Part shown: positions 18,276-48,690 of the stretch, one piece after another | Layout: each line of letters opens with the position of its first letter | Position numbering within the stretch: position 1 is the stretch's first letter | Assembly: GCF_006345805.1 (NCBI RefSeq) | Contig: NC_042998.1 | Coordinates: forward strand, 207,018,001-207,082,000 | Direction of reading: 5' to 3' | From: Octopus sinensis | Lineage: Eukaryota | DNA: 64,000 nt | Notes under the pieces: generated by a model | The model's database searches: none | Told to the model about the DNA's origin: nothing | Seen by the model: only the letters and a program-made list of their open reading frames with translations | Position numbers and translations under genes: made by a program

Positions 18276-18331
<56 letters not shown>

Positions 18332-18872: not shown

Positions 18873-18933
<61 letters not shown>

Positions 18934-27469: not shown

Positions 27470-27740
27470 CACAATGCACACACAACACACACACACTCAA
27501 CACACACAACATACACAACACACATACACACACAACATACACGCACAAACACAACATACACACACACACACACACACCATACACAACACACACACACAAC
27601 ATACACACAACATACACAAACACAACATACACAAACACACACACACACACACAACATACACACACAACATACACACACAACATACACAAACACAACATAC
27701 ACACACACACAACATACACAACACACACACACACACAGTT
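27470..27740. repeat. (CA)-rich compound microsatellite (CACAACATACA units)
   Basis: Direct inspection. Confidence 0.9.
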
Positions 27741-28307: not shown

Positions 28308-29658
28308 CAGTGTTTCTCAACCCTTTTTTTTTCCTATGGACCCCTGTGGTTCCTCTTTTCCTCAGATAGGCCCCATTGTCATTTTAGGTGTAAAAAAAAA
28401 TCTTATATAATTAAACCTTATCAAGAATTTTATAGAAAGGTGGCAAGCTGGCAGAATCGTTAGCACGCGGTATTTCGTCCATCCTTACGTTCTGAGTTCA
28501 AATTCCACCGAAGTCGACTTTACCTTTCATCCTTTCGGAGTCGATAAATTAAGTACCAGTTGTGTATTGGGATCAATCTAAATGACTGACACCCTCCTCC
28601 AAAATTTCAGGCCTTGTACCTTTTGTAGAATTTTGTCAAGAATTTAAAATATTTTGTCGAATGTAGAAGTACAGGGCGTCCATAAAGTCTCTTTACAATT
28701 TTTAAATTTTATTACAAAGGCAGTTGACAAGATATCTTAACCAGATTTGTTTTATTGCAATAATTGTTTATTAAAGTTTTTTTAACTGTTATTTAATAGA
28801 CCTCAGTATGGGCACCATTAGTTGCGCGAAGCACATCAAGACGGTACTTGATTTCTTGCCATGTTCACTGTAGGATAGCCTCATCAACGGTGGCAATGGC
28901 ATTACGAATCCTTTGCTTCAAGTTAGCAATGTCCCGTATCTTTGTTTGATACACGATATCTTTTACATAACCCCATAAAAAGAAGTCCAAGGGAGTGATA
29001 TCTGGCGAACGCGGTGGCCGTGGAATTGACTCATCCCTTCCAATCCATCGGTCTGGAAATGTTTGACTGAGGAACTGACAAACAGACCGTCCCCAATGTG
29101 GTGGTGCACCATCTTGCTGGAGAATGATGGCTGGTTGTAAATCAATCAGTTGTGGTGCCACATATTCGGTCAGAAGTTCGAGGTAAACATCTGCAGTAAT
29201 TGTTGCCTCGTTGAAGAAAAAGGGACCAATTATTCAATTGCTCATGATTCCACACCACACATTCACTTTTGGACTATCCCGTTGAAGCTCCTTAGTCACA
29301 TGGGGGTGTTCTGATGCCCAGATTCTCACATTGTGTCTGTTTAATTTCCCTGAAACATTAAAGTTGCCTCGTCACTAAAACAAACTCGCTTGAGGAATGC
29401 TTCATCCTCATTTTGTAGGGGTTCAGTGAATCAGTTCCCTTCCATCAACAGAGTATGTGAAACACAAAAATTTAATATCAATAAAAACTTTAATAAACAA
29501 TCATTAAAATAAAACAAATCTGGTTAAAATATTTCATCAACTGCCTTTGTAATAATTTCTTTTAAATTGTAAAGAGACTTTATGGACACCCTGTATTATT
29601 GCACATATTTTAACAACGGATCCCCAAGGGTTACATGGACCACGGTTGAGAGCCATTG
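28308..29658. mobile_element. hAT-type MITE hosting a SINE (28437-28625) and the rosa element
   Basis: TIRs CAGTGTTTCTCAACC / GGTTGAGAGCCATTG; 8-bp flanks ATTTAAAT and TTTTAAAT (7/8 match, central TA as for Buster/Charlie). Related ends at ~16154, ~44765-45387 and ~60497-60950. Confidence 0.75.
28672..29593 (-). mobile_element. Tc1/mariner DD41D (rosa-type) deletion derivative with ~110-bp TIRs and a decayed catalytic domain
   Basis: TA at 28670-28671 and 29594-29595; TIR CAGGG(C/T)GTCCATAAAGTCTCTTTACAATTT. ORF 28865-29161(-) has QQDGAPPH...WIGR...PPRSPDITPLDFFLWGYVK, with 41 residues between the 2nd and 3rd Asp. Confidence 0.92.
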
Positions 29659-30184
29659 TTTTAAATGATGAATTCAAGCTACCGGTATTTTTTTTGTTTT
29701 TCGTCTTTTTTTTTCTTTTCCCCAACTTTCTCTCTTTCAGAAACCAGTACACTCAGTCAGGTTTAGACAGAACAATCAACCCAAGTTTAAAAGGGTAAAA
29801 AAACAAAAAAAAAGTAACAAAAAACTCTAAAATAAACGTAAAACCTCTAGGAAAGCTTTACTATTTGGTTTGAATAACTCCACTGCTAACCACCAGTTCC
29901 TTCTCTGGAACCGTAGCTCTTCATTTTAGTAGAATAGTTTAGTGTGTGTGTGTGTGTGTGTGTTACTGGTACACGTTTACACTATTTCTGTCTCCCACAG
30001 TCACTGCACTTTTATAAACAAAACTATAACCCTTATTTCTTATTTGTGGACTTTAGTGCATAACCTTAGGTCTAATGCTTTTGTATTTGCTGTTTTCAAC
30101 ATATAAAATGGTGTTAAAACGTTTCCATTTTGGATTTGGCAATGTGAGATTTTACAAGACTTATAACATTTTTGGTGGTGTGTA

Positions 30185-30272
<88 letters not shown>

Positions 30273-30782
30273 CTATTGAGTCAAGTACGTTAACGCCAAC
30301 ATCAAAGTAAAAATCAAATGGAAATTGAAGTTAAGAAACCTCTGCCGGTGGCATGTAAAAAGCACCGTCCGAACGTGGCAGATGCCAGCACTGCCTGACT
30401 GGTGTCGGTGACACATAAAAGCACCAACCGATTGTGGCCGTTTGCCAGCCTCCTCTGGCTCCCATACCAGTGGGACGTAAAAAGCACCCACTACACTTTT
30501 GGAGTGGTTGGCGTTAGGAAGGGCATCCAGCTACAGAAACTCTGCCAGATCAAGATTGAAGCCTGGTGCAGCCATCTGGTTCGCCAGTCTTCAGTCAAAT
30601 CGTCCAACCCATGCCAGCATGGAAAGCGGATGTTAAACGATGATGATAATATAATTTAATGTATACAGTATTAAAATGAGCCACTAAAGGTTTCTTGCTA
30701 TGAAAACCTGTTGATAGCAAATTGTTATAACCTGTCTTGTGTCTCTGTGCTCATGGTTCTGTTTGAAAGCAAGTTATAAATC

Positions 30783-31175
30783 TGGATGGATGGAAGCACT
30801 CCGTCGGTTACGACGATGAGGGTTCCGGTTGATCCGAATCAACGGAACAGCCTGCTCGTGAAATCAACGTGTAAGTGGCTGAGCACTCCACAGACACGTG
30901 TACCCTTAACGTAGTTCTCGGGGATATTCAGCGTGACACAGAGAGTGACAAGGCCGGCCCTTTGAAATACAGGTACAACAGAAACAAGAAGTAAGAGTGA
31001 GAGAAAGTTGTGGTGAAAGAGTACAGCAGGGATCACCCCCACCCCCTGCCGGAGCCTCATGGAGTTTTAGGTGTTTTCGCTCAATAAACACTCTCAACGC
31101 CCGGTCTGGGAATCGAAACCGCAATCCTACAACCGCGAGTCCACTGCCCTAACCACTGGGCCATTGCACCTCCAC
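30783..31175 (-). mobile_element. tRNA-headed SINE family 3; second copy ~37980-38275(-) shares head and core but has a different tail
   Basis: Minus-strand head TGGAGGTGCAATGGCCCAGTGGTTAGGGCAGTGGACTCGCGG...GGTTTCGATTCCC (A and B boxes). Confidence 0.85.
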
Positions 31176-32733
31176 ATACACACGCACATATATATATATT
31201 AATTCAGCATTTTTCACTTGCTGCCGACTGAAACTGTGCTTGCGTGGTGAATTTTGATAAAAAATTTAATATATAATGATGAGACGTGTGTTATTCTGTC
31301 TCTAAATTATATGTTAGTGTTTTGGCGTAGCCACTGATGAGAACTTCGCCTAGCAAATTATTTTATTTGCTAATTAGAGGTATGGCTGTAAAAAAACAAG
31401 GTAGAAGTTTTTATTTTTGATTCCCTTCAAAATTGCGCTTAAATGTGGATTTGGATGTCTTGACTGCTCCTTCTAGCATGTAAGGCTGCCTGTTAAGGGT
31501 CGCCTCTTTTGCGTTTATTTGTACACTAATTTTATATATATACAAACACACACACACACAGGTGGATAGTTAGGTTGGCCATTTAGGATTTTTGTTTGAA
31601 TTATCTTCATCATCATCATTTAACATCCGTTTTCCATGCTGGCATGGTTGGATGGTTTAACACGGTGGTGAGCTGGCAGAATCGTTAGCACGCTAGGCAA
31701 AAAGCTTAGCGGTATTTTGTCTGCCGTTACGTTCTGAGTTCAAATTCCGCCGAGGTCGACTTTGGCTTTCATCCTTTCAGGGTCAATTAAATAAGTACAA
31801 GTTACACACTGGGGTCGATATAATCGACTTAATCCATTTGTCTGTCCTTGTTTGTCCTCTCTGTGTTTAGCCCCTTGTGGGTAGTAAAGAAATAGGTTTG
31901 ACAAGGTGGCAAACCAGAGATCTGCACCAAACACCAATAGTCTGTTTTGGCATGGTCTCTACAGCTCAATGCCCTTCCTAATGCCAACCACTTTGCAATC
32001 AATAAACAGATATTTATTTCTTTGAAGATCAATAATGAAACAATAGCTTTTAGTGTGCCCTGATTGATGAAGCTCTTGTATGAAGTCTTGAAGTTCTATT
32101 CAGGTCTTTGGAAATGGTCTGGTGGAGTCAAAAGGCATTGGAATTATTATATCTTGGCCACTATTTTTGTGTGAAATGTTAAAAAGTGTTGCTTAGATTG
32201 GCTTTAAAATGTTGTCCTGCTGCAGTTAGAACCCATATATCCATTTTCGTACACTGGCGGTGTGTTGTCATAATCTTGGTAGATGTTGGTGCCAGCAGAT
32301 TCAAGGTTTCGCTGACCGGCACTGGAACCCAACAATCCACCATTTAATATCTTAGAACAATGAAGCCTGCAATGGGCCAACATTTATACATCTGTACCTT
32401 ATTCTGTTGGCATATAATTCAGAATTTCTTACTATGGAAACTTGTAGAAGCTTTAGCTATAACTAGTAAACAGTCTGGCTTGGAAAAGGAATATACTTTT
32501 GTCTTTGTGTGTGTGTATGTGTACAGTGATGTGTTCTGTGTTTACTCAAGTGCAGTGCAATTTCAAACATAATGTGACCCCTTTTTGTATCTTGAAAATT
32601 TATCTGTAGTATAATAATGGCTACCGATGTTAACCCTGGTATTTTTGGTGATTTATTTTAAATTTCTGGCATCATGTACGAGTAAATACACTACATATAA
32701 ACACACATGGGCATACATAGACTTGTGTGTGTG

Positions 32734-32770
<37 letters not shown>

Positions 32771-34030
32771 GCACACATACATACATACATACACAATGTC
32801 TCATGAATTTAGAATTCTAAGAAAAATAATGCCTTTGCAGAATCTACTCTCAATATACAAAGCAGTCAACCAAATATAAATTAAAGATGATAAATGCCTA
32901 TCATAATAAATGTATATACACAAACGTGCACACTTATATATTTTAGTGCTTTGAATTTTCTAGCATTTTGCGAATAACATCAGAAATAACAGTCCTGTGT
33001 GCAAGACCTGGTTTTCTCCACGGCCATTTTACTTAATTTTTTTTTTACAACATTATTATTCCAAATTCTTGGGACCAGTGTGTGTATGTATATACACATA
33101 TATATGACACACACACACACACACATATAACTCTTAAACTAACTCCCTCCAAGTGTTTTCCAATGTTTTTTTTTGGCATGCTTTATTTTAACTTTGCTCA
33201 TGTTTTGCATTTGTATACCCCCCCTCCTGTATAATTAACCCCCTAACTACCCCCTGTTTGGTGTAATTGTAGTAGTTTATGCTGGCATGGTTTTCTTTTA
33301 ATTGCTTTTTTCTTATATTTTTCTCATTACTGCTTTTATATTTTTATTTCAATGTAATTTGTTTTTTTGTTCTTTTTTTATTTTTCAAAGATTTTTGACA
33401 AAATATTTAAAAACAATTTGTTGTTGTTTGAACCATTTTAAAATCTATGTTTGCGTAATTCTAATCTAATTTTTAATTCCTGAATCTTTTATGTGTCTTT
33501 TACCGAGAAATATTTCTTCTACTTGGACTCGATCCTTTCAGCCACTTTCTTCATTGTTATCTCTGCGAGTCAAGAATGTCTCAAGCTCCCCCCCCCCCCG
33601 AAGGGACCTTCTCCATAGTTATTCAGCTGCTAAATTTCTCAGTTCACACCTTACCACCACCACCATCATTTAATGTCCTTTTTCCAATCTGGCATAGGTT
33701 GGACAGTTTGACAGGAGCTGGTAAGCTGGAAGGTTGTACCAGGTTCCAGTAATCTGTTTTGGAATGGTTTCTTAACACCCAACCACCTTTTAACAACCAT
33801 CTGGATGGCATTGAGCAACACCACCCAGAATATACTTTGTGGACTCTCTTGTGACAGATGTGGGCTTTGCAGGTGCTTGCTTAACAACCTGCTCAGATGG
33901 TTTGTTTATAGTGATCAAACATATGCGCTGTACATCATTTCACTCCCCCCATCAAATTGGTGTTACCTGTACAGGTGCACAATATGCCCCTCATCAGATG
34001 TTCAAGTAATTGCAGAGGACCATTGACTGA

Positions 34031-34505
34031 TATGGAGTAAAGATTGTTTGCCAACATAACACGGCAGTCCTGGTTTAGGACGAATGTTGCAGTAATTTAG
34101 CCCCAGGAGACATCGTCTCCAGCTGGCTACACGACATGATCTGTGTCCTTATATTTTCAAACAAGGGAATCTAACACCCCAACTCAGCTCAAAACAATAT
34201 CTGTGTATCGCGATTTCTGGATTATTTCTCTTCATCAGCACAGAATAATTGTTTGACTGATAAAGGGAAATAACCCAGAAATCGTGATACACAGGTATTG
34301 CTTTGAGCTGAGTGGGTGTGCTAGATTCCATTGTTTGAAAATATAAGGACACAGATCGTGTCATATAGCCAGCTGGAGACAATGTCTCCTAGGGATAAAT
34401 TACAGTAACATTAGTCCAAACCAGGACTACCATGTTATGTTGGCAAACAATCTCTATTCCATAGCACTGTTGCTGAATATCTCTCATTGTGAGATTTAAA
34501 AATAG
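34031..34505. mobile_element. Fold-back element with ~207-bp arms (relatives at ~2958-3500 and ~37200-37480; diverged relative 43121-43575)
   Basis: 34031-34238 is the reverse complement of 34257-34463, with an 18-nt spacer. Confidence 0.85.
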
Positions 34506-35528
34506 TAATTTTCTAATTGACTATGTTTTGCTCAAGAACAAAATGTGCCACTTGGTCTGGGAATTGAAACCATGATCTTTAGATTGTCATTGCAACATCC
34601 TAGCCACTATGCCATGCACCTTCACATCCAGGATATACAATGCCTGAAAAATGGGGGATGGTCATGGCTGGGGTGTCTTTGATTACAGGTCTGCTCTGTT
34701 GACCTGGTGCTAAACACCATGGAAGTATAAAATGACATCATCACCTGACTTTGCTAATGAACCGATTTCTATTGGTTCTCATTGCAAAACCTACTTGGGA
34801 CTTGGTAGAGGAATCTAGAATCCTATGTTCAACATAAGACAAGTAAACCATTTGTGGTACCGATTCCATGGTCTGTTCTTTACTGGGAGTAAAACTTTGA
34901 CCAAACCGTTGGAAGTGGGTTTGGTTGTGCTTTAGGATTCTGTATCCAATGATGTTAATGACTCAATTAACGTTATCTCAGACTGTTTGATGCATTTTCA
35001 ATCCTGGAATGATTGAACGCAGGAGTTTCCCTGAAACAAACGGCCCAAAGTGTGTAGTGTGCAGAAAGTAATTACACTTAAGGAATGAAACTAAGAATAT
35101 AAACAGGAAAGCATAAACTTTACATGTACTTCATACTTTGTATTCAACAGCTGTTTCATTAAGATAAACATTACTAAATGTATAATTACGTAATTATGAT
35201 ACATAATTAATTTCAAAGCTGTGTTTACACAAATCAATCAGGATATATATATTGTTCCTCTTGGATTTACTTCACTGTAACAATGTGTTGAAATTTTAAT
35301 TAACTGCTATTTATTAATTGAATTCCTAATTACTGTGAATTTAGTTTTTATGTTCATACATCAGTTCTTTATATGGAATTAAGGCTTTATATTAACAATG
35401 AAACAGCTTTTCTCTTCACCTAAAAGACAGGCTTTGAGGTGTGCTATATAGCGTGTAACAAAACATACCAAAGTACTGCTAGGACAGTTGTTACAATTTA
35501 AAACATTTATACAAAATACATTTTGTAC

Positions 35529-35973
35529 ATTATTTACATTTGACGGATATTTGTCCTCATCTTGTTTGTTGATAACACAATGTTTCGGCTGATATACCCT
35601 CCAGCCTTGATCAGGTGTCTTGAGGAAATTTCGAACCTGGGTTCTCATTCTTTAGGTATTTTTCAATGTTATTATTATTATTTTCAGGTCACTGCTTGGA
35701 ATTGAACTCGGAATTTTGGGGTTAACCCATGCTCTTAACAACTACGCCATATGCCTGTAGTGGTTAAGAGTGCAGGTTACTAACCCCAAAATTCCGAGTT
35801 TGATTCCAAGCAGTGACCTTAATAATAATAATAATAATGAAAAATACGTCAGGAATGAGAACCAGGTTTGAAACTTCCCCAAGACACCCGATGAAGGCTG
35901 GAGGGTATATCAGCCGAAACATTGTGTTAACAACAAACAAGATGAGGACAAATATCCGTCAAATGTAAATAAT
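35529..35973. mobile_element. Palindromic element: two tRNA-headed, hammerhead-bearing units head-to-head (relatives at ~42499-42845, ~44975-45295, ~58855-59075)
   Basis: Arms of ~220 bp are reverse complements around a central CATATG at 35748-35753. Confidence 0.85.
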
Positions 35974-36122
35974 TCCTCATCTCTTAAATATAGAAAATAC
36001 TGTTCTGTTCTCTTCATTTTCTTCTAAAACAGTTCTTTTTTCCTTTTTGTCATCTTCTAAACGTATTTCACCCGTCCTCTGTTACTGTTTATATATTTTC
36101 CCTTTCCTTTCTCTTCTAAAAG

Positions 36123-36251
36123 ACCAAACTACCGCCACCGCCTGAAACCAGCAGAGGAGAACCACTCCAGGCTCACCAGTGGACTAATTTCCTGGATGCG
36201 GATGGCAAGGTTACTAATATTGAGGAAGTGAAGAAAATTATATTTCGAGGT
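36123..36251 (+). CDS. TBC1D15: TBC1D15-like exon (TKLPPPPETSRGEPL...KKIIFRG)
   Basis: Pyrimidine tract then AG at 36121-36122; donor GTAAGT at 36252; 129 nt, phase 0 to 0; start of TBC domain (W..F.D..G.....K..IFRG). Confidence 0.92.
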
Positions 36252-36650
36252 GTAAGTGAATTGTTAAATTTGTTTCAGAGTGTAAAGAAGTGCTGATCTT
36301 TAACCATGGAGGGAACTTGGGGAAGAGCTAGACCCAGGATGACATGGGAAAGGGTGGCGAAGTGTGTACCGGGTGCTTTTTACATGGCACCGGCAGCAGT
36401 GTTTTTTATTTGGCACCATCCCAGTTGACCATCGAGTGTACCATGCTATTCCAGACCAGTGATAAGTGAATCAGTGTTAAACGAGGCTGCTTGTATGAAC
36501 ACTTTAATGTCTAACTCCATGCAAATAATGTCAAGTGACAACCGAGGGAATAATTTTGGGGATTCAGATTTTATAGTTTTTTTTTTTTTCTCCCCTAAAG
36601 TTTTTACCATTTTGATTTACCATGTTCTTCATCTTCTCCCCTAACTTTAG

Positions 36651-36754
36651 GGTATTGAACCTGCAATGCGTGTTGAAGTTTGGAAGTTTCTCTTAGATTA
36701 TTACAAATGGGACTCAACAAAGAAGAGTCGAGAGGAGGAACGGAAGAGAAAAGT
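36651..36754 (+). CDS. TBC1D15: TBC1D15-like exon (GIEPAMRVEVWKFLLDYYKWDST...RKRK)
   Basis: Acceptor ctttag ending 36650; donor GTAAGT at 36755; phase 0 to 2; R..VWKFLL motif. Confidence 0.95.
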
Positions 36755-37594
36755 GTAAGTTTTCTTTCTAATTAACTAATTGGAAATTATCATTTTATCA
36801 TAATAGCCCTACCACCCCTCCAATTATATTGTTTAATTAACTTGGTAAGATGAAGAGAATTTAGCTACTGTTTCTAGCAGATCAAGCAGTGATTTGCGTC
36901 ATAATGTTGCACACAGACCTCACCTGTTGACCATATATTCTCATTCTTGTACCTTGAGGGTGTCCCTCGACACCTCATCATCATCTTTTCCCTTTTCTTT
37001 CTTTCCAGCTTCTACAGCAAGACCCTTGTTCCTGTCCCTCTATCATAGTCTTTGTATGTTTATATGTGGTTAGTGTGGCCTCCTAGAATTTACAGATGGA
37101 CAGGAATATATCGGAAAATACAGAATGGAACATATTTAAATTGTCTCACTACATCTATGTAATTAAATAAAGTCTAAATCTGTTGAGACATGGTCTATTA
37201 ATGGAGTAAAGACTGTTTGCCAACATAACATGGCAGTCCTGGTTTAGGACGAATGTTGCTGTAATTTAGCCCCAGGAGACATCGATCTGTGTCCATACAC
37301 TTTTGAACAAGGGAATCTAGCACCCCCACTCAGCTCAAAACAATATCTGTGTATGGCGATTTTCGGGTTATTTCCCTTCATCAGCATAGAATAATTGTTC
37401 AGCTTAGAGGTGGCACTACCAAATTCCCATTTGAAATATATAGTTTTCAAAGTGACAACTAGTCACTGAACTAGCCACTGTCTCCTTTCTTGAGAAATTT
37501 GAAGCCAAAGTTATGTTACTGTCTTGTTTAAAAGTGAAAAGTTAATCTGTCGTTTTTCTTTTTGAATAACTGTTTGTTTGTTTTTTGTTTCCAG

Positions 37595-37689
37595 TGATGA
37601 TTATTTTAAAATGAAACTTCAGTGGAAAACCATAAGTGCAGATCAAGAAAGCCGGTTTACTAAACTAAAAGACAGCAAGACACTTATAG
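37595..37689 (+). CDS. TBC1D15: TBC1D15-like exon (DDYFKMKLQWKTIS...KTLI)
   Basis: Acceptor gtttccag ending 37594; donor GTGGGT at 37690; phase 2 to 1. Confidence 0.95.
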
Positions 37690-38272
37690 GTGGGTTGGCA
37701 TCGTTAGTTTAATCAGAGCATCACCTGAGGTTGATGATATTGTGTGCACAATTAAACCCATTAGATTATTGCTGCCGGTAGGTGGCGCATCAATCGTCAT
37801 AAAGTCAATCGGTTGTAAGTTGACGATGACCTGTATCCATATGTGTATTATATGTATATCATCATCTATATATATATACATATTTAATCTTTCTATTATA
37901 TGTAATTTTCTAGATGGTGTAATTTAATTTTTCATTTTGAATTGATAAAAGGTGGTTTTTTTCTTCTAATATATATATATCACATGATCACGTGACCGAC
38001 CAGACCATCTGATGTTTTTACACATCGCTGGTCACAATGCGTTCACATTGTTTTAGCCTTCGAATGACGCCACCCCGCTGGCTAAGCGAGCAGGCCAACA
38101 GAAGAAAGAGTGGGAGAAAGAGTGGTGAAAGAGTACAGCAGGGATCACCACCCCCTGCCGGAGCGTCGTGGAGCTTTTAGGTGTTTTCGCTCAATAAACA
38201 CTCACAACGCCTGGTCTGGGAATCGAAACCGCGAGTCCGCTGCCCTAACCACTGGGCCATTGCATTGCACCT

Positions 38273-38314
<42 letters not shown>

Positions 38315-38784
38315 TTTGGGAAATTTGATTTAGTATTTCTAAATTGAATTTTTCCCTGTAAGTTTGGAATAATATTCCCTCATTATTATTATTACATATA
38401 CATACATTCATATATATGGATCTCTTCTTGTCTGGGGGTCCCAGATGAACCTACCTCACAACAGGAGACGCAGATGCGGGCAGCGGCATCAAACTCCCTT
38501 GTTGATCAAGTGCCACATATCAGAGGTGGATTCACATATTAGTGTAGCTCATTCAGCGGTGGTGCCCCAGCATGGCCGCGGCCTTCGGGCTAAAACATTT
38601 TTACGGATTTAAGGATTTATATATATATTTCGCTTTTGTATCTGGTTTGCTGACAAAGTAGACTTGAAATGAAATGAAATGAAACCAGAGAAAGAAACGG
38701 GTGTATTTTATTATAAGTTTTCTTGATAGTGTCATGGAAACCCAATATTTGTGTAACTGATGACGTTTTTGTTTGTCTCTCCAG

Positions 38785-38901
38785 AAAAAGATGTGTCCCG
38801 AACCGATCGCACTCACAAATTCTTCGAAGGAGACGGAAATCATAACTTACAAGTTCTAAACGACATTCTCAGAACATACTGCATGTATAACTTTGATCTT
38901 A
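38785..38901 (+). CDS. TBC1D15: TBC1D15-like exon with Arg finger (EKDVSRTDR...YCMYNFDL)
   Basis: Acceptor ctctccag ending 38784; donor GTAAGT at 38902; phase 1 to 1; IxxDxxR motif completed across the junction. Confidence 0.96.
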
Positions 38902-39071
38902 GTAAGTTTGGAATTGTTTGCTTCAATATTTTGTCTTGTCTGGTTGCAGAAAATTCTGAAAGAAAGACCCAACCCCTACCCCACAAAAATTTAAAAAAAG
39001 ATATGAGGACAGATTTCAACCATTAGTGAAGTTCTGTTTTTAAGGTGTACCAGCAAGTCTTTATTAATAAT

Positions 39072-39722
39072 ACCTATTTCTTTATTACCCACAAGGGGCT
39101 AAACATAGAGGGGACAAACAAGGACAGACATAGGTATTAAGTTGATTACATCGACTCCAGTGCTTAACTGGTACTTATTTAATCGACCCCGAAAGGATGA
39201 AAGGCAAAGTCGACCTCGGCAGAATTTGAACTCAGAACATAAAGACAGACGAAATACATATTCAATTCTTTATTGCCCACAAGGGGCTAAACATAGAGAG
39301 GACAAACAAAGACAGACAATTGGATTAAGTCAATTATATCGACCCCAGTAACTGGTACTTATTTAATCGACCCCGAAAGGATGAAAGGCAAAGTCGACCC
39401 CGGCAGAATTTGAACTCAGAACGTAGCGGCAGACGAAATACCGCTAAGAATTTCGCCCGGTGTGCTAACGTTTCTGCCAGCTCGCATACATATTTCTTTA
39501 TTGCCCACAAGGGGCTAAACACAGAAGGGACAAACAAGGACAGACAAACGGATTAAGTTGATTACATTGACCCCAGTGCGTAACTGGTAATTTATCGACC
39601 CTGAAAGGATGAAAGGCAAAGTCGACCTCGGTGGAATTTGAACTCACAATGTAACGGCAGCTGAAATACCGCTAAGCATTTCGCCCGATGTGCTAACGAT
39701 TCTGCCAGCTCGCCGCCTTAAT
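39072..39722 (-). mobile_element. Three consecutive SINE family 2 copies
   Basis: Three ~200-230 nt reverse-complement units starting at ~39072, ~39265 and ~39493. Confidence 0.88.
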
Positions 39723-40499
39723 AATGCCATTGAGATGGAGTTCGCCAAGAAATCGTCTTTTAAGTGTCTGCCTCTCTGTGTTTGCATGGGTTAAACGATT
39801 GTAGTTGAGGTAGGTTTTCTACAACTCGATGCCTTTCCTGTTAACAACCTTCACTTGTTTTCAAGTGAGATGATAACCTACTTGTCTATTGATTCAGACA
39901 TGAGCAGCTGAATGTCTGGACATGTTTTCACATGAAATTGCTAAACAAATGATGCCATCTTGGTATGAATGGTAACTTTGTTTACAGTCAGTACAGAGTT
40001 ACATTGTTTTTCCAGATTTGCAAAACCTATAACTTGGTAAACACAAGAGAAAAATGAGTATAAGCTGGAAGAATTATAGAGTAGTTTCCAGGGATTACAA
40101 AGTAAATATATTTGGCCTCAAATATTGTTTAGCCCTTTTGATTCCAAGCCAACCTGGTTCTATAATACAAACTTACTTCTTAACCCCAAGATCCCGAGTT
40201 CGATTCCAGGCAGTGACTGAATAATAATAACAATAATAATAATAATAATAATAATATTAATAATATGGGTCCCACCTGCTAGGTCATGTGCTGTTAATCT
40301 TGATATGAGATCACCATGTCGCGCACATATGGTTGTGATGCATGTGCCTGGTGTACCCTTATCAGACGGGTAGTCATGATGGGTATACTGGGCTTTGTAT
40401 ATTTTACCCCAGTGTCACTTCGGTGGCATACACTGCTCTCTCACTCAATAGTAATAATAATAATAATAATAATGATATCGACAAACTTCCTTGTTTTAA

Positions 40500-40882
40500 C
40501 CCTTTCGTTACCAACCTGGCCAAATCGATTATATATAAGTTGATTATATTGACCCCAGTGCCTAACTGGTACTTAATTTATCGACTCCGAAAGGATGAAA
40601 GGCAAAGTCGACCTCAGTGGAATTTGAACTCAGAACGTAACGGCAGCCGAAATACCGCTAAGTGTTTCGCCTGATGTGCTAACGTTTCTGCCAGCTCTGT
40701 AATACAAATGTCTTGTTTTCATAAGTTTTGAATTAAAATCTTCCACCAAACCTTAGTCACAATTTGTGTTCCTAACACTAGCTTAATGATAATAACCAAG
40801 TTATTTTACTAAATTCTTTGTTATATTTAAAACAATTGAATGAAACACAGAGCATCTCAAGAGAAATATGGTAACGAAAGGG
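40500..40882. mobile_element. piggyBac-type MITE with an inserted SINE (~40525-40700)
   Basis: TTAA at 40496-40499 and 40883-40886; TIRs CCCTTTCGTTACC / GGTAACGAAAGGG. Confidence 0.85.
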
Positions 40883-41475
40883 TTAAAGTGTTTGCTAAAT
40901 TAAAACTTACCCATGAGATTTCATGTGAATTTATGTTTCAAACTCCAGTTTAATAATGACAGTTATTTTACTGAATTCTTCATTATTTTTTTTTAATTGA
41001 ATGAAACAAGTACTGTATATGGTAAAAAACCCAAAAGGGTTAAGTTACACTTTTCAATTCTACAACGGGCCCAAAACCTCAAATTTGCAGATTTTATTTC
41101 TGTTAATGCTGACTAAAGTGTAGCTGTTTCTCAAGTAATTGGTTTTTAGATTAACCCAACTTTCCTAATCTACTTTAACTCATGGCATCATAGATCAAAA
41201 TAATACTTACTTGGTTTGCAAGATTCTTTATGTGAATTTGTGTGTTGAAGCATATTTTATTGTGTCTGGGGAGAGTCATTCTCTTTTAGTACATTATTAA
41301 TTTAACATACTCACTGGTCTGATTTCCTCTCATTTTCACATAAATGAAAATAAATGAGTGGCAATCAGATTGGTGAGTGTGTTAAATTGATAAGACACTA
41401 AAAGACACGACTCTCCCTCAGACTCAATAACCAATACTTAAAATTTCTTCTAAAGTTGTCTCCCTTATTTTACAG

Positions 41476-41576
41476 GTTATGTTCAAGGAATGAGCGACTT
41501 GCTCTCTCCTATATTAGTAATAATGGAAAATGAGGTTGATGCCTTTTGGTGCTTCGCTGGTTTTATGGAAACTGTT
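41476..41576 (+). CDS. TBC1D15: TBC1D15-like exon with Gln finger (YVQGMSDLLSP...EVDAFWCF...ETV)
   Basis: Acceptor ttttacag ending 41475; donor GTAAGT at 41577; phase 1 to 0. Confidence 0.96.
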
Positions 41577-43794
41577 GTAAGTTTCTTTTCTTTGTGTAAA
41601 CTTTAAATTTATGCTTCAAAGGTTGAACCAGAGCTGCAGCTTGCCAAGGTTCTACGTGTCTTGTCTCCAGTGATAAAACTATTTTAATCCTATCATCATA
41701 CTGTCATCATCATCATCATCGTTTAACGTCCGTTTTCCATGCTGGCATGGGTTGGACGGTTTGACTGATGTCTGGAGAGCCAGTGGCTGCTCCAATCTGA
41801 TCTGGCAATGTTTCTACAGCTGGATGCCCTTCCTAACGCCAACCACTCTGAGAGTGTAGTGGGTGCTTTTTATGTGCCTCTGGCACAAGAGTCAATCAGT
41901 GGGTACTGACATCGCCATGTTCAGTTGGTGCTTTTTATGTGCCACCAGCATGGGAGCCAGTCAGGCGGATCTGGCATTGACCGAGTTCAAGTGATACTTT
42001 TTACGTGCCACCAGCACAAGAGCTAGTCAGGGGGAACTGGTCACAGCTACGATATTGGTTTAACTTGACTCAACGGGTCTTCTCAAGCATATCATACTGC
42101 CCGATGCATCTGGGTATTCTTAACAGGGCCAGTCATGCATGGCTGCAATCTCACATTAGTTGCCGAATCTTCTCAGTCGCAGCACATCTCCAAAGGTCTC
42201 TTGTCATGTTCCTGATATTATGGGAGTAGCATAAACGAAATCTCTTCTGGATTCCTGTTAAGAGATAAACTATTAAAAATAACCAACTGGTCCCATGTTG
42301 CAGCTTTGGGGTCAGCTGTGTTTAGGATTCATTACTTATGGGGTCCCACCATACCTGTTGTTTACTTTTGTTTTTAACCAAATAAAAAAAAAACGATTTT
42401 GCAATCAATCAAGCATGTGATAAACCCAGCACTTTGTTTTGTAAACATGCAAGGCCTACAGTTCTATGTTTAAGAGATGAGGAATTATGTACATTATTTA
42501 CATTTGACGGATATTTGTCCTCATCTTGTTTGTTGTTAACACCAGCCTTCATCGAGTGTCTTCGGGAAATTTCGAACCTGGGTTTTCATTCCTATGGTAT
42601 TTTTTTGATGTTGTTATTATTCATGTGGCATAGTGGTTAAGAATACGGGCTACTGACCCCAAGATTCCGGTGACCTGAATAATAATAATAATAATAATAC
42701 CAACAGTAACAACAACAACATTGAAAATTACCTTAGGAATGTGAACCCAGATTTGAAACTTTCCCAACACAGGCTGGAGAGTATATCAGCTGAAATGCTG
42801 TGTTAACAACAAACAAGATGAGGACAAATATCCATCAAATGTAAAAAATATGCAAGGCCTAGACTTTTTTTATTTATTTTTTTTTAATGCATTTGAGCAA
42901 ATTATTGGTGATATTTACTCTTTGGATGAAGAGCTTAGACTTACACTAGCAATAAGAGGGATTCAAACTGGTGAAAGAGATGAAGAAAGTAATGATCCAA
43001 GATAACAAATATGGCAGTTGAGAGAGAAAGGCCTATCATTGTTCTTCTCCTCAGTTTTTTGAGGATTCTGCTCATTGCTTTTCCTGCAGTCATTTCTCTT
43101 GAACTGTATGGGCGACTGATAGCATGTTGTCAACTTAATGTGACAGTCCTGTGAAAGGGAAGAATGCTACTGTTATTTAACCCTAGGAAACACCGTTTCC
43201 TGTTGGACTTGATTCATTTCCTGTGTCCTTATGTTTACAAAGGGGGAGACAAGCACCTCCACCCACCAAAGCCAGAATCTAGAGACTAGTTTCAGAGTCA
43301 TTGCTCATCATCAGTCTGGTGTAGCCTGGCTTGCTGGCTGTCGATGCCTATCCACCTTTGTAGACATATAATAATTCAAGTGAAATACATTCACTGATTT
43401 TTGAAATAGAAATAATATATTTCTACATCTCTGAGATTTATGCAGTAGCAGTATGATAATCTCTGAGAGATTTAGAAATGTGTCAAAGTCCAATAGGAAA
43501 CGGTATTTCCTAGGGCTAAATAACAGTAACATTCTTCCCTTTCATGGGACTGTCACATTAAATTGACAACATACTTTCACTTTATTGTGCTGCTACTGCA
43601 TAAATCTCTCTGAGAGATTTAGAAATGTATTATTTGTATTTTTTTGCTCAGGATTTCAGGTGAAGAGTAAAGTTAGACACAAGGGCCCGACTCTGAGTAG
43701 GTTAACTCTCTGTTAAATTATGTATTTGTTATGGGTGTATATAAAGTTATTTACCATATTTTGAGGTGTTTTTTTTTTTTTGTTTTGCTTTCAG

Positions 43795-43894
43795 TGTAGT
43801 AACTTCGAAATGGATCAACAAGGTATGAAAACGCAGCTGGCACAAATGCACACCTTGATGCAGTTTGTGGACCCTGAATTGTGCAGTTATCTTG
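43795..43894 (+). CDS. TBC1D15: TBC1D15-like exon (CSNFEMDQQGMKTQL...ELCSYL)
   Basis: Poly-T tract, ttcag ending 43794; donor GTAAGT at 43895; phase 0 to 1. Confidence 0.95.
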
Positions 43895-44038
43895 GTAAGT
43901 ATTTCTTAATACGATAGACCCCCCCCCCCCCTCTAGCTTTTCATCTTTCTCTTGTCGTAGCTGAACTTCATAATTGCTTTGAGAAATTAATTATAAACAA
44001 TGCAAGCTTAAAAATTCTTGAAGTAGTTTATTGTAAAA

Positions 44039-44437
44039 CTAGCAGTATCGCCCGGCGTTGCTCGGCTTTTTGTTTCGACCCTTTAGAATTGGAATTTTTG
44101 AAAAGTAAAAATTTTGCATTATGTAGCTTGTTATTCTCTTTAAGTGAACATTTTTCTGGTTCAAATACACTGAAAAATAGCAACACAGCAGTAAAAAAAA
44201 TCGTAAAAAAATAGGGATTTTCATTTTTAAAAAAAAGCACCTTTTTGATGTAAATAATTTTTGGTGTTAACATGGTCCGATTTGAATTTTTTCTTCTACG
44301 AAAGGAAGAGCAAGCCTTCTTCTATCATACTCTCAATTTTGGTCAACTTGCACCACAGGGTCTCGGAGGAGAAAGTGTTAGTTGAAGGCTACCAAACCTG
44401 CCACACACAGACAACTTCAGCTTTATATTTAGAGAGA
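44039..44437 (-). mobile_element. Non-autonomous Helitron-like element
   Basis: A|CTAGCAGTATCGCCCGGCGTTGCTCGG ... TTTATATTTAGAGAGA|T; same termini as 7474-7871 with a different core. Confidence 0.7.
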
Positions 44438-45190
44438 TTTGTTATTGCAGTTAAATAATAATAATAATATAATAATAAGCCTTTCTACTATAGACACAAG
44501 GCCTGAAATTTGGGGTGGGGGTTACAGTCGATTAGATTGACCTCAGTATATAACTGGTATTTAATTTATCGACCTCTAAAGGATGACAGGCTAAGTTGAT
44601 CTTGGTGGAATTTGAACTCAGAACATTCATGCATGGGTCATTGCCTGTGCAGCCTGACTGGCTCCCCGTGCCAGTGGCATGTAAAAGGAATCATCCGAAC
44701 GTGGATCTGTCTGTTGTAGACAGAGGAGAGTTTTGCAATTCCTTGCAAAATGATTCATTCAAAGCACAGGTTCTCAACCATTTTTTGCCTTTGTGGATCC
44801 ACTCCATTTCTTCTTTATTTCTTGCTGGACCATCATAGCCATTTGATGTCTATAAAAAAAATCCTGCTGTATTTTTATAATTTAATATTAGGAATTGTAT
44901 AAAAGGAATGTATTGTAGAAGCATAAACAATTTATAAGCCCTAAAATTCACTCCATGGTTGCCCATGGGCTTATAGTGTAGTGGTTAAGAACACAGGCTA
45001 CTAAACCCAAGATTCCGAGTTCGATTCCAAGCAGTGACCTGAATAATAGTTTACATCGTTGTTTAACGTCCGCTTTCCATGCTGGCACAGGTTGGATGGT
45101 TTGACTGAGGACTGGTGAGCCAGAAATAATAATATCCAAATAATAATATCGAAAAATGGGAATGAGAACCCAGGTTTGAAATTTCCCCAA

Positions 45191-45236
45191 GACACCTGAT
45201 GAAGGCTGGAGGGTATATCAGCCGAAACGTTGTGTT
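45191..45236 (+). ncRNA. Minimal type I hammerhead ribozyme motif (predicted)
   Basis: GACAC-CTGATGA-A-GGCTG-GAGGGTATAT-CAGCC-GAAA-CG-T-T-GTGTT: intact core, 5-bp stems I and II, palindromic ACGT helix III. Confidence 0.7.
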
Positions 45237-45988
45237 AACAACAGACAAGATGAGGACAAATATCCATCAAATGTAAATAATATAAATAATATAAATAATG
45301 CATAAGCAATTTATTGCACATAAATTCTAAAAACGAAATCTTCTCTGGACCCCCAAGGGTCATATGGGACGCATTTGAGAACCACTTGTTTAGAGCTGTA
45401 TATGAGTTCCCTCCATCCATGAAATTAACCGTGCCTCTACATTGTGCCACTCATCAAATGTCAGAAGTGACTGCAGAAGTGCTTTGCTCAACAACACAAA
45501 GCGCTGCCCAGACTGGGAATTGAAACCATAATCTTGTGATTGTGAGTGCAACACTAACTACTTGGCCAAGTGCCTTCATATTCTGTAGTATGCACACAGG
45601 TATTGTCTTGGTCTCACTATTGCTGGACACATCTTTGCCACCCTCTCTCTCATCATCATTTCCCTCTTTATCTTACTCACCAAATCTCCTTACCTTACTC
45701 TCAGACTCCATCTCCTTTCTCTTCCACCTGGGCTGTGTCCATCTACCTACAGCAAGGCACCCATCCGTGTCCCTCTTTACCTTTAATCTCTCAACTGACA
45801 CAAAGCCACCCACCACTTTAGCACTACTAAGCCGAAAGGTTCTTTGTCTTGCATGTTGCTTGGTGACCCTGGTGGTGCTGGTGCCACTTAAAATAGTACC
45901 CAGTAGACTGTAAGGTGGTTGGCATTAGGAAGGGAATCCAGGTGTAGAAACCACACCAAAACAGACAACGGAACCTGGTGCAGCTCCT

Positions 45989-46391
45989 GGCCTTACCAGC
46001 ACCAGGCCTTACCAGCACCAGGCCTTACCAGCACCTGGCCTTACCAGCACCAGGCCTTACCAGCTCCTGGCCTTACCAGCACCTGGCCTTACCAGCTCCT
46101 GGCCTTACCAGCACCTGGCCTTACCAGCACCAGGCCTTACCAGCACCAGGCCTTACCAGCACCAGGCCTTACCAGCTCCTGGCCTTACCAGCACCTGGCC
46201 TTACCAGCACCAGGCCTTACCAGCACCAGGCCTTACCAGCACCAGGCCTTACCAGCACCAGGCCTTACCAGCACCTGGCCTTACCAGCTCCTGGCCTTAC
46301 CAGCGCCTGGCCTTACCAGCACCAGGCCTTACCAGCACCTGGCCTTAACCAGTTCCCGGCCTTACCCAGCTCCCAGCCATACCCAGCTCCT
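45989..46391 (+). repeat. 16-bp minisatellite GGCCTTACCAGC(A/T)CC(A/T), 22 regular plus ~3 degenerate units
   Basis: Period of 16 from 45989 to 46340; embedded in an RTE-like 3' fragment. Confidence 0.95.
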
Positions 46392-46498
46392 GTCAAACCA
46401 TCCAACCCATGCCAACATGGAATAACGGATGATGATGATGATGATTATACTACAAAATGTTTTGAGATTTTGACATTATTTTTGTTCTTAAATTTCAG

Positions 46499-46596
46499 AG
46501 AGCCATGATTCAGGGAATTTCTATTTTTGTTTCCGTTGGTTATTGATTGTCTTCAAACGAGAATTTAGTTTCCCAGATATACAGAGATTATGGGAG
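46499..46596 (+). CDS. TBC1D15: TBC1D15-like exon (ESHDSGNFYFCFRWLLIVFKREFSFPDIQRLWE)
   Basis: Acceptor atttcag ending 46498; donor GTACTG at 46597; phase 1 to 0; strongly conserved TBC C-terminal motif. Confidence 0.96.
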
Positions 46597-47554
46597 GTAC
46601 TGTATGCACCCTTTCTTTTCAAATTTCGATAAATTACAAATAATATAAACTTGAAAATACAGGATGTGTGTGTGTGTGTGTGTGGTTGAGCTAAGGCCAA
46701 GGAACAGTGAATATCTTTGTATGGTTAATCTGACCCTGAGAATAGGTTCAAGTGTGGCTGTGTGGTAAGAAGTTTGCTTCCCAACCACATGGTTCCAGGT
46801 TCAGTTCCAGTACGTGGTACCTTGACCAAGTGTGTTCTATATACCTCAGCCAAGCAAAATCTTGTGAATGGATTTAAGGAAATGACTAGTGACCGAGACT
46901 TTTGGAAATATGCTGTGCTTGAGAAGACCTGGCAAGCCAAATGAGACCATAACCTCATGGCTTATGGGTACCTTTTCCTTCTTTGGACACTAAACTCTGC
47001 TTGCGAAGACCTGTTAAGGGAAGTGAAATCAAAATCAAATTTAATGACTGGCATCTGTTCTAGTGGGGTGCAAAGAGCACCATATGAGTGTGATTGTTGA
47101 CAGAGCAGCTAACTGGCTTCAGTGTCAGTGGCACATAAAAGGCACCGTTCAAGTGTGATCGTTACCAGCATCACCTTACTGGCACCTGTGCTGGTGGCAT
47201 GTGTAAAAAGATTTGAGCGAGGTCGTTGCCAATATTGCCTGACTAGCCCCTGTGCCAGTGGCACGTAAAAGCACCCACTACACTCTCGGAGTGTTTGGCG
47301 TTAGGAAGAGCATCCAGCTGTAGAAACTGTGCCAGATCAAGATTGGAGCCTGGTGCAGCCATTTGGTTCGCCAGCCCTCAGTCAAAATCGTCCAACCCAT
47401 GCTAGCATGGAAAGCGGACATTAAACAATGATGATGATGAAACTGAGAGAAGCCTGTTTGACTGTTGCCAATCTTTCTTTGTTCCCAGTTCAGTTTGTGT
47501 ACAAAAGACTGCCTCTTTCCATTATATTTTCTTTCTATTATATTTTCTCAACAG

Positions 47555-47671
47555 GTATTATGGACCGGGTTACCTTGTCAGAACTACCATTTGCTCATTT
47601 GTTTGGCAATCTTAGACAATGAGAAAGCTACGTTAATGGAGAATCGTTTTGGTTTTACTGAAATCTTGAAA
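47555..47671 (+). CDS. TBC1D15: TBC1D15-like exon (VLWTGLPCQNYHLLICLAILD...FGFTEILK)
   Basis: Acceptor caacag ending 47554; donor GTAAGT at 47672; 117 nt, phase 0 to 0. Confidence 0.96.
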
Positions 47672-47938
47672 GTAAGTTCCTATCACAGAGTTGGAAATAA
47701 TATTTGGATTATGTTCTTGCTTATCACCACCATTTTTATGTCTTTGTTTATGCTTTCATTGGTTGGACAGATAGTTTTTCAACACAGCATGCTGTCATGT
47801 TTGCTGTTTTGGTTTCATCTTTGTAACATTCTTTCACCTAAGATCAGCCTTCATCACCTGTCTTTCTATGGTTCATCCTCTTCTGCTCATTCCTTCCACA
47901 CGAATCTCCTGGTACTTCTTCACACACCTGTCATCATT

Positions 47939-48690
47939 TATAGATATTTTCGATCTCATTTGGATTCTTTGCCACCAAATTTGAATTTTTCAATTGGTGC
48001 TCAAGCCTTGAAAAAACAAAAAGAGTTATAAACTACATCAGCCGTAAGGGAATACATGTCTATCTTATCTAACTCATCCAGTAAAGCCCACTGCTACTCA
48101 AACTTCGATCTAACTCCAAGCTTGGGACAACAAACTTGAGTTGGATAAACTTGAATAGTAAGCTCTTTGCTCTTTATAACCGTTTTATGAAGTCACTTTT
48201 TTTGTTAAAGACTTGTTCAATTTGCAGCTCCTCAAAGCAAATGGACTGGTTCTCTTAAGAGGGATCACGGGTTCGAATCTCAGACCAGGCGATGTGTGTG
48301 TTTTCGAGTGGAACACCTAAGCTCCACAGATTCGAACCCGTGATCCCTCTTAAGAGAACCAGTCCATTTGCTTTGAGGAGCTGCAAATTGAACAAGTCTT
48401 TAACAAAAAAAGTGACTTCATAAAACAGTTATAAAGAGCAAAGAGCTTACTATTCAAGTTTATCCAACTCAAGTTTGTTGTCCCAAGCTCGGGGTTAGAT
48501 CGAAATTTGAGTAACAGTGGGCTTTACTGGATGAGTTAGATAAGATAGACATGTATTCCCTTATGGCTGATGTAGTTTATAACTCTTTTTGTTTTTTCAA
48601 GGCTTGAGCACCAATTGAAAAATTCAAATTTGATTGCAAATAATTCAAATTTGGTGGCAAAGAATCCAAACTAGATCGAAAACATCTATA
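47939..48690. repeat. Long inverted repeat (arms 47939-48280 and 48328-48690, 47-nt spacer)
   Basis: Arms compared by eye: ~8 substitutions and one ~21-nt insertion in the right arm. Confidence 0.95.

What the first reader, a model, noticed from the sequence alone, without database searches (positions are those of the whole stretch)
38900..38903. The conserved Gly before the catalytic Gln finger is genomically Ser; a single A-to-I edit would restore it
Seen: the exon ends ...GAT CTT A|GTAAGT (A at 38901) and the next exon starts GT TAT GTT CAA GGA (41476), so the spliced codon is AGT: FDL-S-YVQG. Known: this position is Gly in human TBC1D15 (FDLGYVQGMSDLL) and most TBC domains. ADAR prefers 5'-U and 3'-G neighbours, and coleoids recode many codons by A-to-I editing. 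The A is in UAG both before and after splicing, and editing would give GGT (Gly) and a consensus G at donor -1. A weak candidate partner, CAAACTTACT at 40168-40177, is complementary to 38901-38910 but may be chance. Inference: a candidate restorative recoding site tuning Rab-GAP activity.
Basis: partly seen in the sequence, partly recalled or inferred. Interest (0 to 1): 0.72.

Follow-up and report, generated by a model that had tools for sequence, protein, structure and literature searches.

The report
Octopus TBC1D15 Gly-to-Ser beside catalytic glutamine
Octopuses, cuttlefish and squid-like relatives all encode serine where other animals' Rab7-GAP TBC1D15 has an invariant glycine next to the catalytic glutamine; one A-to-I edit could restore glycine, but nothing available here shows that it happens, and most indirect evidence points to an ordinary, tolerated substitution.

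Summary
Exon 38785-38901 ends GAT CTT A|gtaagt, exon 41476-41576 starts GT TAT GTT CAA GGA, and the spliced codon is AGT (Ser) three residues before the Gln finger of an Octopus sinensis-type TBC1D15 gene.

It is not an assembly error. The same A|gtaagt phase-1 junction is in the O. vulgaris, Argonauta hians and Sepia pharaonis genomes, and AGT is in two decapodiform mRNA contigs. All 113-115 non-coleoid orthologues have Gly. This is the only coleoid-wide change among 118 near-invariant columns.

RNA editing at this site is untested, and the indirect evidence leans against it:
- The favourable U at -1 occurs only in Octopus (G in Argonauta, C in decapodiforms).
- The proposed 10-nt partner is at chance level and leaves the A at the end of the duplex.
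- No RNA structure is conserved across coleoids.
- All 18 RNA-derived decapodiform contigs read A.
- Ser recurs independently in about 4% of distant family members.
- Published base rates for potential restorative sites are below 1% per tissue.

Two points favour it: an Octopus-only exon-intron hairpin (z about -2.9, with the A bulged) and a local peak of synonymous conservation.

Best reading: a fixed, tolerated Gly-to-Ser substitution. Interest is low to moderate.

The parts
7241..50008 (+). TBC1D15 orthologue. 13 coding exons were found in the window: 7241-7355, 9152-9365, 12213-12324, 20844-21038, 36123-36251, 36651-36754, 37595-37689, 38785-38901, 41476-41576, 43795-43894, 46499-46596, 47555-47671, and 49745-50008 including the stop. 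The first exon was not located. Optional cassette exons lie at 12668-12712 and about 29738-29782.
   Evidence: Exon model with GT-AG introns throughout. 100% identity to O. sinensis XP_029655014 and its isoforms. Pfam PF12068, PF00566 and PF23436 are precomputed for the identical protein.
38785..38901 (+). Exon carrying the Arg-finger motif (IEKDVSRTDR), ending with the first base of the Ser codon.
38901..38901 (+). The genomic A. It is the first base of AGT (Ser433 of XP_029655014) and position -1 of the 5' splice site. It is the hypothetical A-to-I target.
   Evidence: The A is conserved in the O. vulgaris, Argonauta hians and Sepia pharaonis genomes and in two decapodiform mRNA contigs.
38902..41475 (+). 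Phase-1 intron (2574 nt, gtaagt...ttacag) that splits the Ser codon.
   Evidence: The intron position is conserved in four genomes, but the sequence beyond gtaagt is not.
41476..41576 (+). Exon starting GT TAT GTT CAA GGA. It supplies the last two bases of the Ser codon and the YxQ Gln-finger motif.
38826..38924 (+). Predicted exon-intron hairpin specific to the genus Octopus. Exonic AACUUACAAG (38844-38853) pairs with CUU-A-GUAAGUU (38898-38908), leaving A38901 as a one-base bulge and sequestering the donor.
   Evidence: -24.2 kcal/mol, z -2.85, 1 of 200 shuffles as stable. O. vulgaris gives z -2.93, Argonauta +1.09 and Sepia +2.73.
40168..40177 (+). It is an exact 10-nt complement of 38901-38910, judged to be a chance match.
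38861..41488 (+). Patch of unusually conserved synonymous positions (codons 347-364 of the 586-aa model) straddling the exon 8/9 junction. The exonic parts are 38861-38901 and 41476-41488.

Best explanation
The codon is what it looks like. A single G-to-A transition (GGT to AGT) was fixed before octopods and decapodiforms split, and it replaced the otherwise invariant Gly three residues before the Gln finger of TBC1D15 with Ser. The mRNA is translated as Ser in essentially all, or the great majority of, molecules. Coleoid TBC1D15 therefore works as a Rab-GAP with Ser in the loop (NFDL-S-YVQG) that presents the catalytic Gln.

Shown here: the substitution, its conservation with the same codon and the same phase-1 intron across coleoids, and its uniqueness among near-invariant columns.

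Inferred: that Ser is functionally tolerated (neutral, compensated or mildly adaptive) and that A-to-I editing plays no necessary part.
For: 1. The genomic A and the AGT codon are present in O. sinensis (the window), O. vulgaris, Argonauta hians and Sepia pharaonis, and in two decapodiform mRNA contigs. This conservation since the octopod-decapodiform split, without reversion to G, fits a residue that is accepted as Ser.

2. Every coleoid protein in the collection has Ser. That includes 11 distinct proteins from 18 spliced, RNA-derived Logan contigs. The majority RNA base is therefore A in those runs.

3. Ser has been fixed independently elsewhere in the family. It is found in an unidentified non-cephalopod animal with genomic codon AGT in four assemblies. 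It is found in 5-6 of 144 representatives at 50% identity, alongside one Ala and one Asn. It is found in 4 of 91 partial proteins. These other occurrences suggest Ser is compatible with the fold and with catalysis.

4. The ADAR-favoured 5' U is not conserved: it is G in Argonauta and C in decapodiforms.

5. No double-stranded partner is conserved.

6. Published base rates are low. Only 0.6-0.95% of potential restorative sites are edited per O. bimaculoides neural tissue, and far fewer in non-neural tissues. About 90% of restorative sites are edited below 20%. Only 11 restorative sites are shared by all four coleoids studied (PMC6881472 supplement).

7. From general knowledge: TBC1D15 is a broadly expressed housekeeping GAP, so the Ser form must function in tissues where editing is negligible.
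Against: 1. G433S is the only coleoid-wide fixed difference among 118 columns that are at least 97% conserved in 113 non-coleoid orthologues. It is a G-to-A change in the one animal clade with massive A-to-I recoding. That is exactly what the harm-permitting model predicts (PMC6881472).

2. In Octopus the site has the optimal UAG context and lies in a local hairpin more stable than shuffles (z about -2.9).

3. The gene's strongest patch of synonymous conservation sits on this codon (gene-wide permutation P = 0.004 for 16-codon windows, 0.017 for 10, 0.15 for 24). Junction-proximal constraint is a general trend in this gene.

4. Consensus assemblies cannot see editing below about 50%, and the tissues of the runs are unknown.

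5. No Octopus RNA-derived sequence was available.
Confidence: 0.72

Rival explanations
1. Incidental low-level editing confined to Octopus. In Octopus neural tissue, ADAR deaminates A38901 in a small fraction of pre-mRNAs (a few per cent up to about 20%), helped by the UAG context and the genus-specific exon-intron hairpin. This yields a minor Gly isoform and a slightly stronger donor, without selected function.
For: The UAG triplet. A hairpin with z about -2.9 in O. sinensis and O. vulgaris. Coleoid neural editing touches a few per cent of coding As, and potential restorative sites are edited somewhat more often than synonymous ones (PMC6881472).
Against: In the predicted fold the A is a pure bulge with no opposing base, and the helices around it are short (3 and 7 bp). 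From general knowledge of ADAR substrates, that is a poor geometry. Base rates are low. There is no RNA evidence either way.
Confidence: 0.13
2. Genuine restorative (harm-permitting or compensatory) recoding. Ser is deleterious, and substantial A-to-I editing restores Gly in neurons across coleoids, so that editing is now under selection and tunes Rab7-GAP activity.
For: A unique G-to-A change at an otherwise invariant position, found only in coleoids. AGT is retained in all coleoids. A peak of local synonymous constraint.
Against: The -1 base is G in Argonauta, which is ADAR-disfavoured, and C in decapodiforms. No structure is conserved. All 18 RNA-derived decapodiform contigs read A. Ser is tolerated in other lineages. 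The gene must also work in non-neural tissues where editing is rare. No TBC15 entry was found in the truncated copy of the Jiang & Zhang source data, which is weak evidence.
Confidence: 0.04
3. Assembly error or polymorphism: the true genomic base is G.
For: None.
Against: The same A is present in four independent genome assemblies from three genera and in two transcript contigs. All annotated isoforms of O. sinensis, O. vulgaris and O. bimaculoides have Ser.
Confidence: 0.01

Closest known systems
TBC1D15 / TBC1D17 (Gyp7-type Rab7 GAPs; solved GAP domains 5TUB, 5TUC, 9SI6, 9SI7)
   Same: Same domain order (PH_RBD plus RabGAP-TBC). The Arg-finger motif IxxDxxR and the Gln-finger motif YxQ are both present. 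The two catalytic exons are about 70% identical to the solved domains. The gene groups with mollusc orthologues in a tree.
   Different: Ser replaces the Gly that precedes YVQ. This is the only coleoid-wide change at a near-invariant column.
Restorative (harm-permitting) A-to-I sites of coleoids (Jiang & Zhang 2019, PMC6881472)
   Same: The site meets the definition of a potential restorative site: an ancestral G-to-A nonsynonymous substitution whose A-to-G edit would recreate the ancestral amino acid.
   Different: Editing itself, which is what turns a potential site into a restorative site, has not been shown. More than 99% of potential sites per tissue are not edited.
GRIA2 (GluA2) R/G site (general knowledge)
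   Same: An A within one or two bases of a 5' splice site, whose editing would give Gly and could interact with splicing. An exon-intron hairpin is predicted in Octopus.
   Different: At the R/G site, the downstream intron supplies a conserved complementary sequence that puts the A inside an imperfect duplex of roughly 25-30 bp. Here the intronic 10-mer is at chance level and terminal. The local hairpin leaves the A bulged. Nothing is conserved outside the genus.
Insect Adar Ser>Gly auto-recoding site (PMC10578469 and PMC10965108, seen)
   Same: The same codon chemistry: AGU Ser to GGU Gly by one edit.
   Different: That site is an experimentally established, diversifying edit. Here no editing has been demonstrated, and the Gly would be ancestral.

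Membership tests
TBC1D15/Gyp7-type RabGAP | RabGAP-TBC domain together with the N-terminal PH_RBD domain | tested here: met
   The 586-aa model is 100% identical over the aligned parts to P0001, for which PF12068, PF00566 and PF23436 are precomputed. Hits to the PDB TBC1D15/17 GAP domains have E-values of 1e-31 to 1e-33.
TBC1D15/Gyp7-type RabGAP | Catalytic dual finger: Arg in IxxDxxR and Gln in YxQ | tested here: met
   IEKDVSRTDR in exon 38785-38901 and YVQG in exon 41476-41576. R399, D401, R402, Y434, V435, Q436 and G437 are invariant in the 55-sequence alignment.
TBC1D15/Gyp7-type RabGAP | Orthology (groups with the TBC1D15 of other molluscs) | tested here: met
   In the maximum-likelihood tree the coleoid clade sits inside molluscs with 98-100% support.
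TBC1D15/Gyp7-type RabGAP | GAP activity on Rab7 | not testable with these tools
   This needs a biochemical assay.
ADAR A-to-I recoding site | A in genomic DNA and G in a fraction of cDNA from the same animal | tested here: inconclusive
   No reads were available. All 18 RNA-derived decapodiform contigs, and both mRNA contigs that were read, carry A, which excludes only majority editing in those runs. No Gly-bearing coleoid fragment was found in any size class.
ADAR A-to-I recoding site | Target A embedded in a double-stranded RNA of adequate length | tested here: inconclusive
   Octopus has a 107-nt hairpin with z -2.85, but the A is a bulge flanked by 3-bp and 7-bp helices. The structure is absent in Argonauta and Sepia. 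In the mRNA there is a 10-bp hairpin that is broken by synonymous changes in decapodiforms. The intronic 10-mer is at chance level.
ADAR A-to-I recoding site | Neighbour preference (5' U or A and not G; 3' G) | tested here: inconclusive
   The triplet is UAG in O. sinensis and O. vulgaris, CAG in Sepia and the second decapodiform, and GAG in Argonauta.
Restorative / harm-permitting editing site (Jiang & Zhang 2019) | The amino acid after editing equals an ancestral state, and the change is a G-to-A substitution on the coleoid lineage | tested here: met
   Gly is found in 113-115 of 113-115 non-coleoid orthologues, and Ser (AGT) in all coleoids. The state in Nautilus was not found, so the branch is bounded only as lying before the octopod-decapodiform split.
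Restorative / harm-permitting editing site (Jiang & Zhang 2019) | The site is actually edited, at a level sufficient to mask the harm wherever the gene is needed | not testable with these tools
   This needs matched DNA-seq and RNA-seq. The base rates and the independent occurrences of Ser make it unlikely.
GluA2 R/G-type exon-end site | A conserved intronic editing-complementary sequence pairing across the target A | tested here: not met
   The 10-mer at 40168-40177 pairs only 3' of the A and does not extend. The introns are not alignable beyond gtaagt between Octopus, Argonauta and Sepia.

The most novel reading that the evidence does not exclude
A38901 is edited at a substantial level in Octopus (and perhaps other coleoid) neurons. 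Nervous tissue would then make a Gly (ancestral, fully active) TBC1D15 alongside the genomic Ser form. That would be a clean single-residue example of harm-permitting or compensatory recoding at a catalytic loop. The edit would also convert the donor to the consensus G at position -1, coupling recoding to splicing efficiency.
Probability: 0.05. Interest if true: 0.55.

Novelty: already known. Interest (0 to 1): 0.2.

Why it matters
If the site were edited, it would be a rare, mechanistically interpretable test case for the debate over whether coleoid recoding is adaptive or merely permits harmful G-to-A substitutions. It is one residue, next to a catalytic finger, with an easy GAP assay.

As it stands, it documents a coleoid-specific replacement of an otherwise invariant Gly in a housekeeping Rab7 GAP. 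That is a modest comparative observation about an annotated gene.

Tried and rejected
1. Published editing tables. No paper combines TBC1D15 with cephalopod editing. The supplements of Shoshan 2021 and Alon 2015 held here have no TBC15 or TBC17 entry. The Jiang & Zhang source data are stored truncated and show only TBC16 and TBCD5. This route is not conclusive.

2. Edited (Gly) coleoid fragments. I searched the 5.8-billion-protein collection with 104-aa and 240-aa queries. No coleoid fragment of either kind exists in those size classes, so the search is uninformative.

3. Nautilus state. No sequence falls on the coleoid stem in the tree. P0430, at 74% identity, is not clearly cephalopod and has Gly.

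4. High-level editing from genome-versus-transcript mismatches in Sepia. L002 is about 98% identical to the S. pharaonis genome, with all mismatch types and no A>G excess, so it comes from a different species.

5. Long-range mRNA partner for the conserved patch, sought with RNAduplex. Energies were no better than other tiles, and positions were only loosely shared. Rejected as noise.

6. Inverted-repeat scan of 36-44 kb. None of the 25 longest repeats listed covers the site.

7. Rfam and tRNA scans around the intron. Nothing was found.

8. The idea that the Ser caps the following helix. The AlphaFold model puts S433 inside the 429-437 loop, not at the cap, so that argument was dropped.

Full report
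**Observation**

The coordinates and letters are exact. Exon 38785-38901 ends ...AAC TTT GAT CTT A, followed by gtaagt. The acceptor is ttacag at 41470-41475, and exon 41476-41576 begins GT TAT GTT CAA GGA ATG AGC. The spliced codon is AGT, giving NFDL-S-YVQGMSDLL.

Guided by tblastn, I built a 13-exon model with GT-AG introns throughout (7241-50008, + strand, 586 aa, first exon not found). Over its aligned parts it is 100% identical to Octopus sinensis TBC1D15 isoforms, which also use two optional cassette exons (12668-12712 and about 29738-29782). The O. vulgaris locus differs in intron length and in a few bases, so the window is of O. sinensis type.

**What the residue is**

The two exons carry the Arg finger (IEKDVSRTDR) and the Gln finger (YVQ) of a TBC RabGAP. 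They match the solved TBC1D17 and TBC1D15 GAP domains at E-values of 1e-31 to 1e-33, and in those structures the aligned residue is Gly. An AlphaFold model built from a 55-sequence alignment places Ser433 in the loop 429-437, between helices 413-428 and 438-449. That loop presents Gln436, and local pLDDT is about 85-92.

**Distribution**

- Among the 120 best full-length homologues, the five coleoid entries have Ser: O. sinensis, O. bimaculoides, Argonauta hians, a cuttlefish cluster that includes Sepia pharaonis, and a second decapodiform cluster. All 115 others (molluscs to vertebrates) have Gly.
- Of 118 columns that are at least 97% conserved in 113 non-coleoid orthologues, this is the only one with a coleoid-wide fixed difference.
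- The codon is AGT in Octopus and in both decapodiform mRNA contigs.
- The genomes of O. vulgaris, A. hians and S. pharaonis have the same phase-1 intron and the same A|gtaagt.
- The base is therefore not an assembly error or a polymorphism. The G-to-A change predates the octopod-decapodiform split. No Nautilus sequence could be found.

Gly is not absolutely required in the wider family:
- An unidentified non-cephalopod animal has genomic TTT GAT CTA AGT TAT GTT CAG GGA in four assemblies.
- Among 144 representatives at 50% identity, 135 have Gly, 5-6 Ser, one Ala and one Asn.
- Four more Ser cases occur among partial proteins.

**Is it edited?**

No reads were available, so this rests on indirect tests.

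*RNA-derived sequences.* Eleven distinct decapodiform proteins from 18 Logan contigs all have Ser. The two contigs I read, L001 and L002, are spliced mRNAs. This excludes majority editing in those runs. It does not exclude minor editing, and the tissues are unknown. No Octopus RNA-derived contig exists in the collection. Searches for short or medium fragments found no coleoid fragment at all.

*Neighbour preference.* The 5' base is T in Octopus, G in Argonauta and C in Sepia and the other decapodiform. The favourable UAG is therefore genus-specific, and Argonauta has the disfavoured 5' G.

*Structure.*
Twelve mismatches follow upstream.
- It occurs by chance in 4.5% of shuffled introns and is matched by a similar 10-mer at another donor.
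- Local folding of the Octopus pre-mRNA gives a reproducible hairpin (38826-38856 with 38895-38924; -24.2 kcal/mol; z -2.85). In it, exonic AACUUAC pairs with the donor GUAAGUU, and A38901 is a one-base bulge.
- O. vulgaris keeps the hairpin (z -2.93). Argonauta (z +1.09) and Sepia (z +2.73) do not, and their introns are not alignable beyond gtaagt.
- In the spliced mRNA the A sits in a 10-bp hairpin that two synonymous changes break in decapodiforms.

*Base rates.* In O. bimaculoides only 0.6-0.95% of potential restorative sites are edited per neural tissue, and 0.03-0.2% in other tissues. About 90% of restorative sites in O. vulgaris are edited below 20%. Only 11 restorative sites are shared by all four coleoids studied (PMC6881472).

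*Point in favour.* The strongest excess of synonymous-codon identity in the gene is at codons 347-364 of the model, straddling this junction.
- Four species, 16-codon windows: 10 identical codons against 3.5 expected, gene-wide permutation P = 0.004.
- For 10-codon windows P = 0.017, and for 24-codon windows P = 0.15.
- Pairwise comparisons are not significant.
- Junction-proximal codons are generally more conserved in this gene (36 observed against 30.3 expected near the other junctions; 49 against 59.6 far from junctions). Splicing constraint and the catalytic context are therefore plausible causes.
- The window size was chosen after seeing the pattern, so I treat this result as suggestive and unexplained.

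**Interpretation**

The best-supported reading (about 0.7-0.75) is an ordinary, fixed and tolerated Gly-to-Ser substitution that is translated as Ser. My reasoning:
- The A has been kept in every coleoid lineage examined, while the flanking synonymous base drifts.
- Ser recurs elsewhere in the family.
- From general knowledge, TBC1D15 is a broadly expressed Rab7 GAP involved in lysosome and mitochondrion dynamics. It must therefore work in tissues where coleoid editing is negligible.

Incidental low-level editing in Octopus neurons is possible (about 0.13). A genuine, selected restorative edit is unlikely (about 0.04). Assembly error is excluded.

**Comparison with known systems**

The gene is a bona fide TBC1D15 orthologue, and all sequence-level defining features are met.

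The site meets the definition of a potential restorative site in the sense of Jiang & Zhang (2019). It does not meet the definition of a restorative editing site, because editing has not been shown.

It resembles the GluA2 R/G site only in lying next to a donor. The defining conserved intronic complementary sequence was tested and is not present.

**Novelty and score**

The gene and its Ser are already in public annotations, and both the idea of restorative sites and the base rates are published. The coleoid-only replacement of an invariant Gly beside the Gln finger is a tidy comparative observation and a reasonable, cheap target for a read-level check. Nothing here indicates a new mechanism. 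Interest 0.2.

Noticed in passing
L007 (Argonauta hians) 32611, 32725, 32799, about 32900 and 33997: The last ~27 nt of the orthologous exon together with its donor (TATAACTTTGATCTGAGTAAGTCATAT) is repeated four to five times inside the downstream intron, embedded in CT-rich microsatellite. These copies are potential decoy 5' splice sites.
   Followed up: partly
window 38861-38901 and 41476-41488 (codons 347-364 of the model): This is the strongest patch of synonymous-codon conservation in the gene across Octopus, Argonauta, Sepia and a second decapodiform (10 identical codons against 3.5 expected; P = 0.004 at 16 codons, weaker at other window sizes). The cause is unknown: splicing signals, RNA structure or codon selection at the catalytic loop.
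   Followed up: partly
window 38826-38924; L009 50326-50432: A predicted hairpin, present only in the genus Octopus, base-pairs the 5' splice site GUAAGUU with exonic AACUUAC (z about -2.9). It could modulate donor use. In O. vulgaris two substitutions lengthen the basal stem.
   Followed up: partly
L003-L006 (Logan genomic contigs SRR23372216, SRR23372231, SRR23372229, SRR31984834): An unidentified non-cephalopod animal with short introns carries the same Gly-to-Ser (AGT) change in its TBC1D15 orthologue, in an exon that is not split at that codon.
   Followed up: partly
window 12668-12712 and about 29738-29782: Two small cassette exons (VYKAFYGPYPVKKPC and KPVHSVRFRQNNQP...) are used in some annotated O. 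sinensis isoforms and have counterparts in the decapodiform clusters.
   Followed up: no
window 38861-38863 (Arg in DILRTYCM): A second coleoid-specific change, Met/Leu to Arg (AGA; AGG in Argonauta), lies 12 residues upstream of the Ser in the preceding helix. It may be co-evolved, but distances in the model could not be measured with the tools.
   Followed up: no
It is probably a fragment of a tRNA-derived SINE. ARAGORN and Rfam find nothing.
   Followed up: partly
Cuttlefish cluster, alignment column 384 (P0134-P0136 versus P0004 and P0137-P0144): The position is Lys in the S. pharaonis genome models but Glu in all RNA-derived contigs, which is an A-to-G type change. The transcripts come from a species about 2% divergent and show no overall A>G excess, so this is probably a species difference.
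   Followed up: partly
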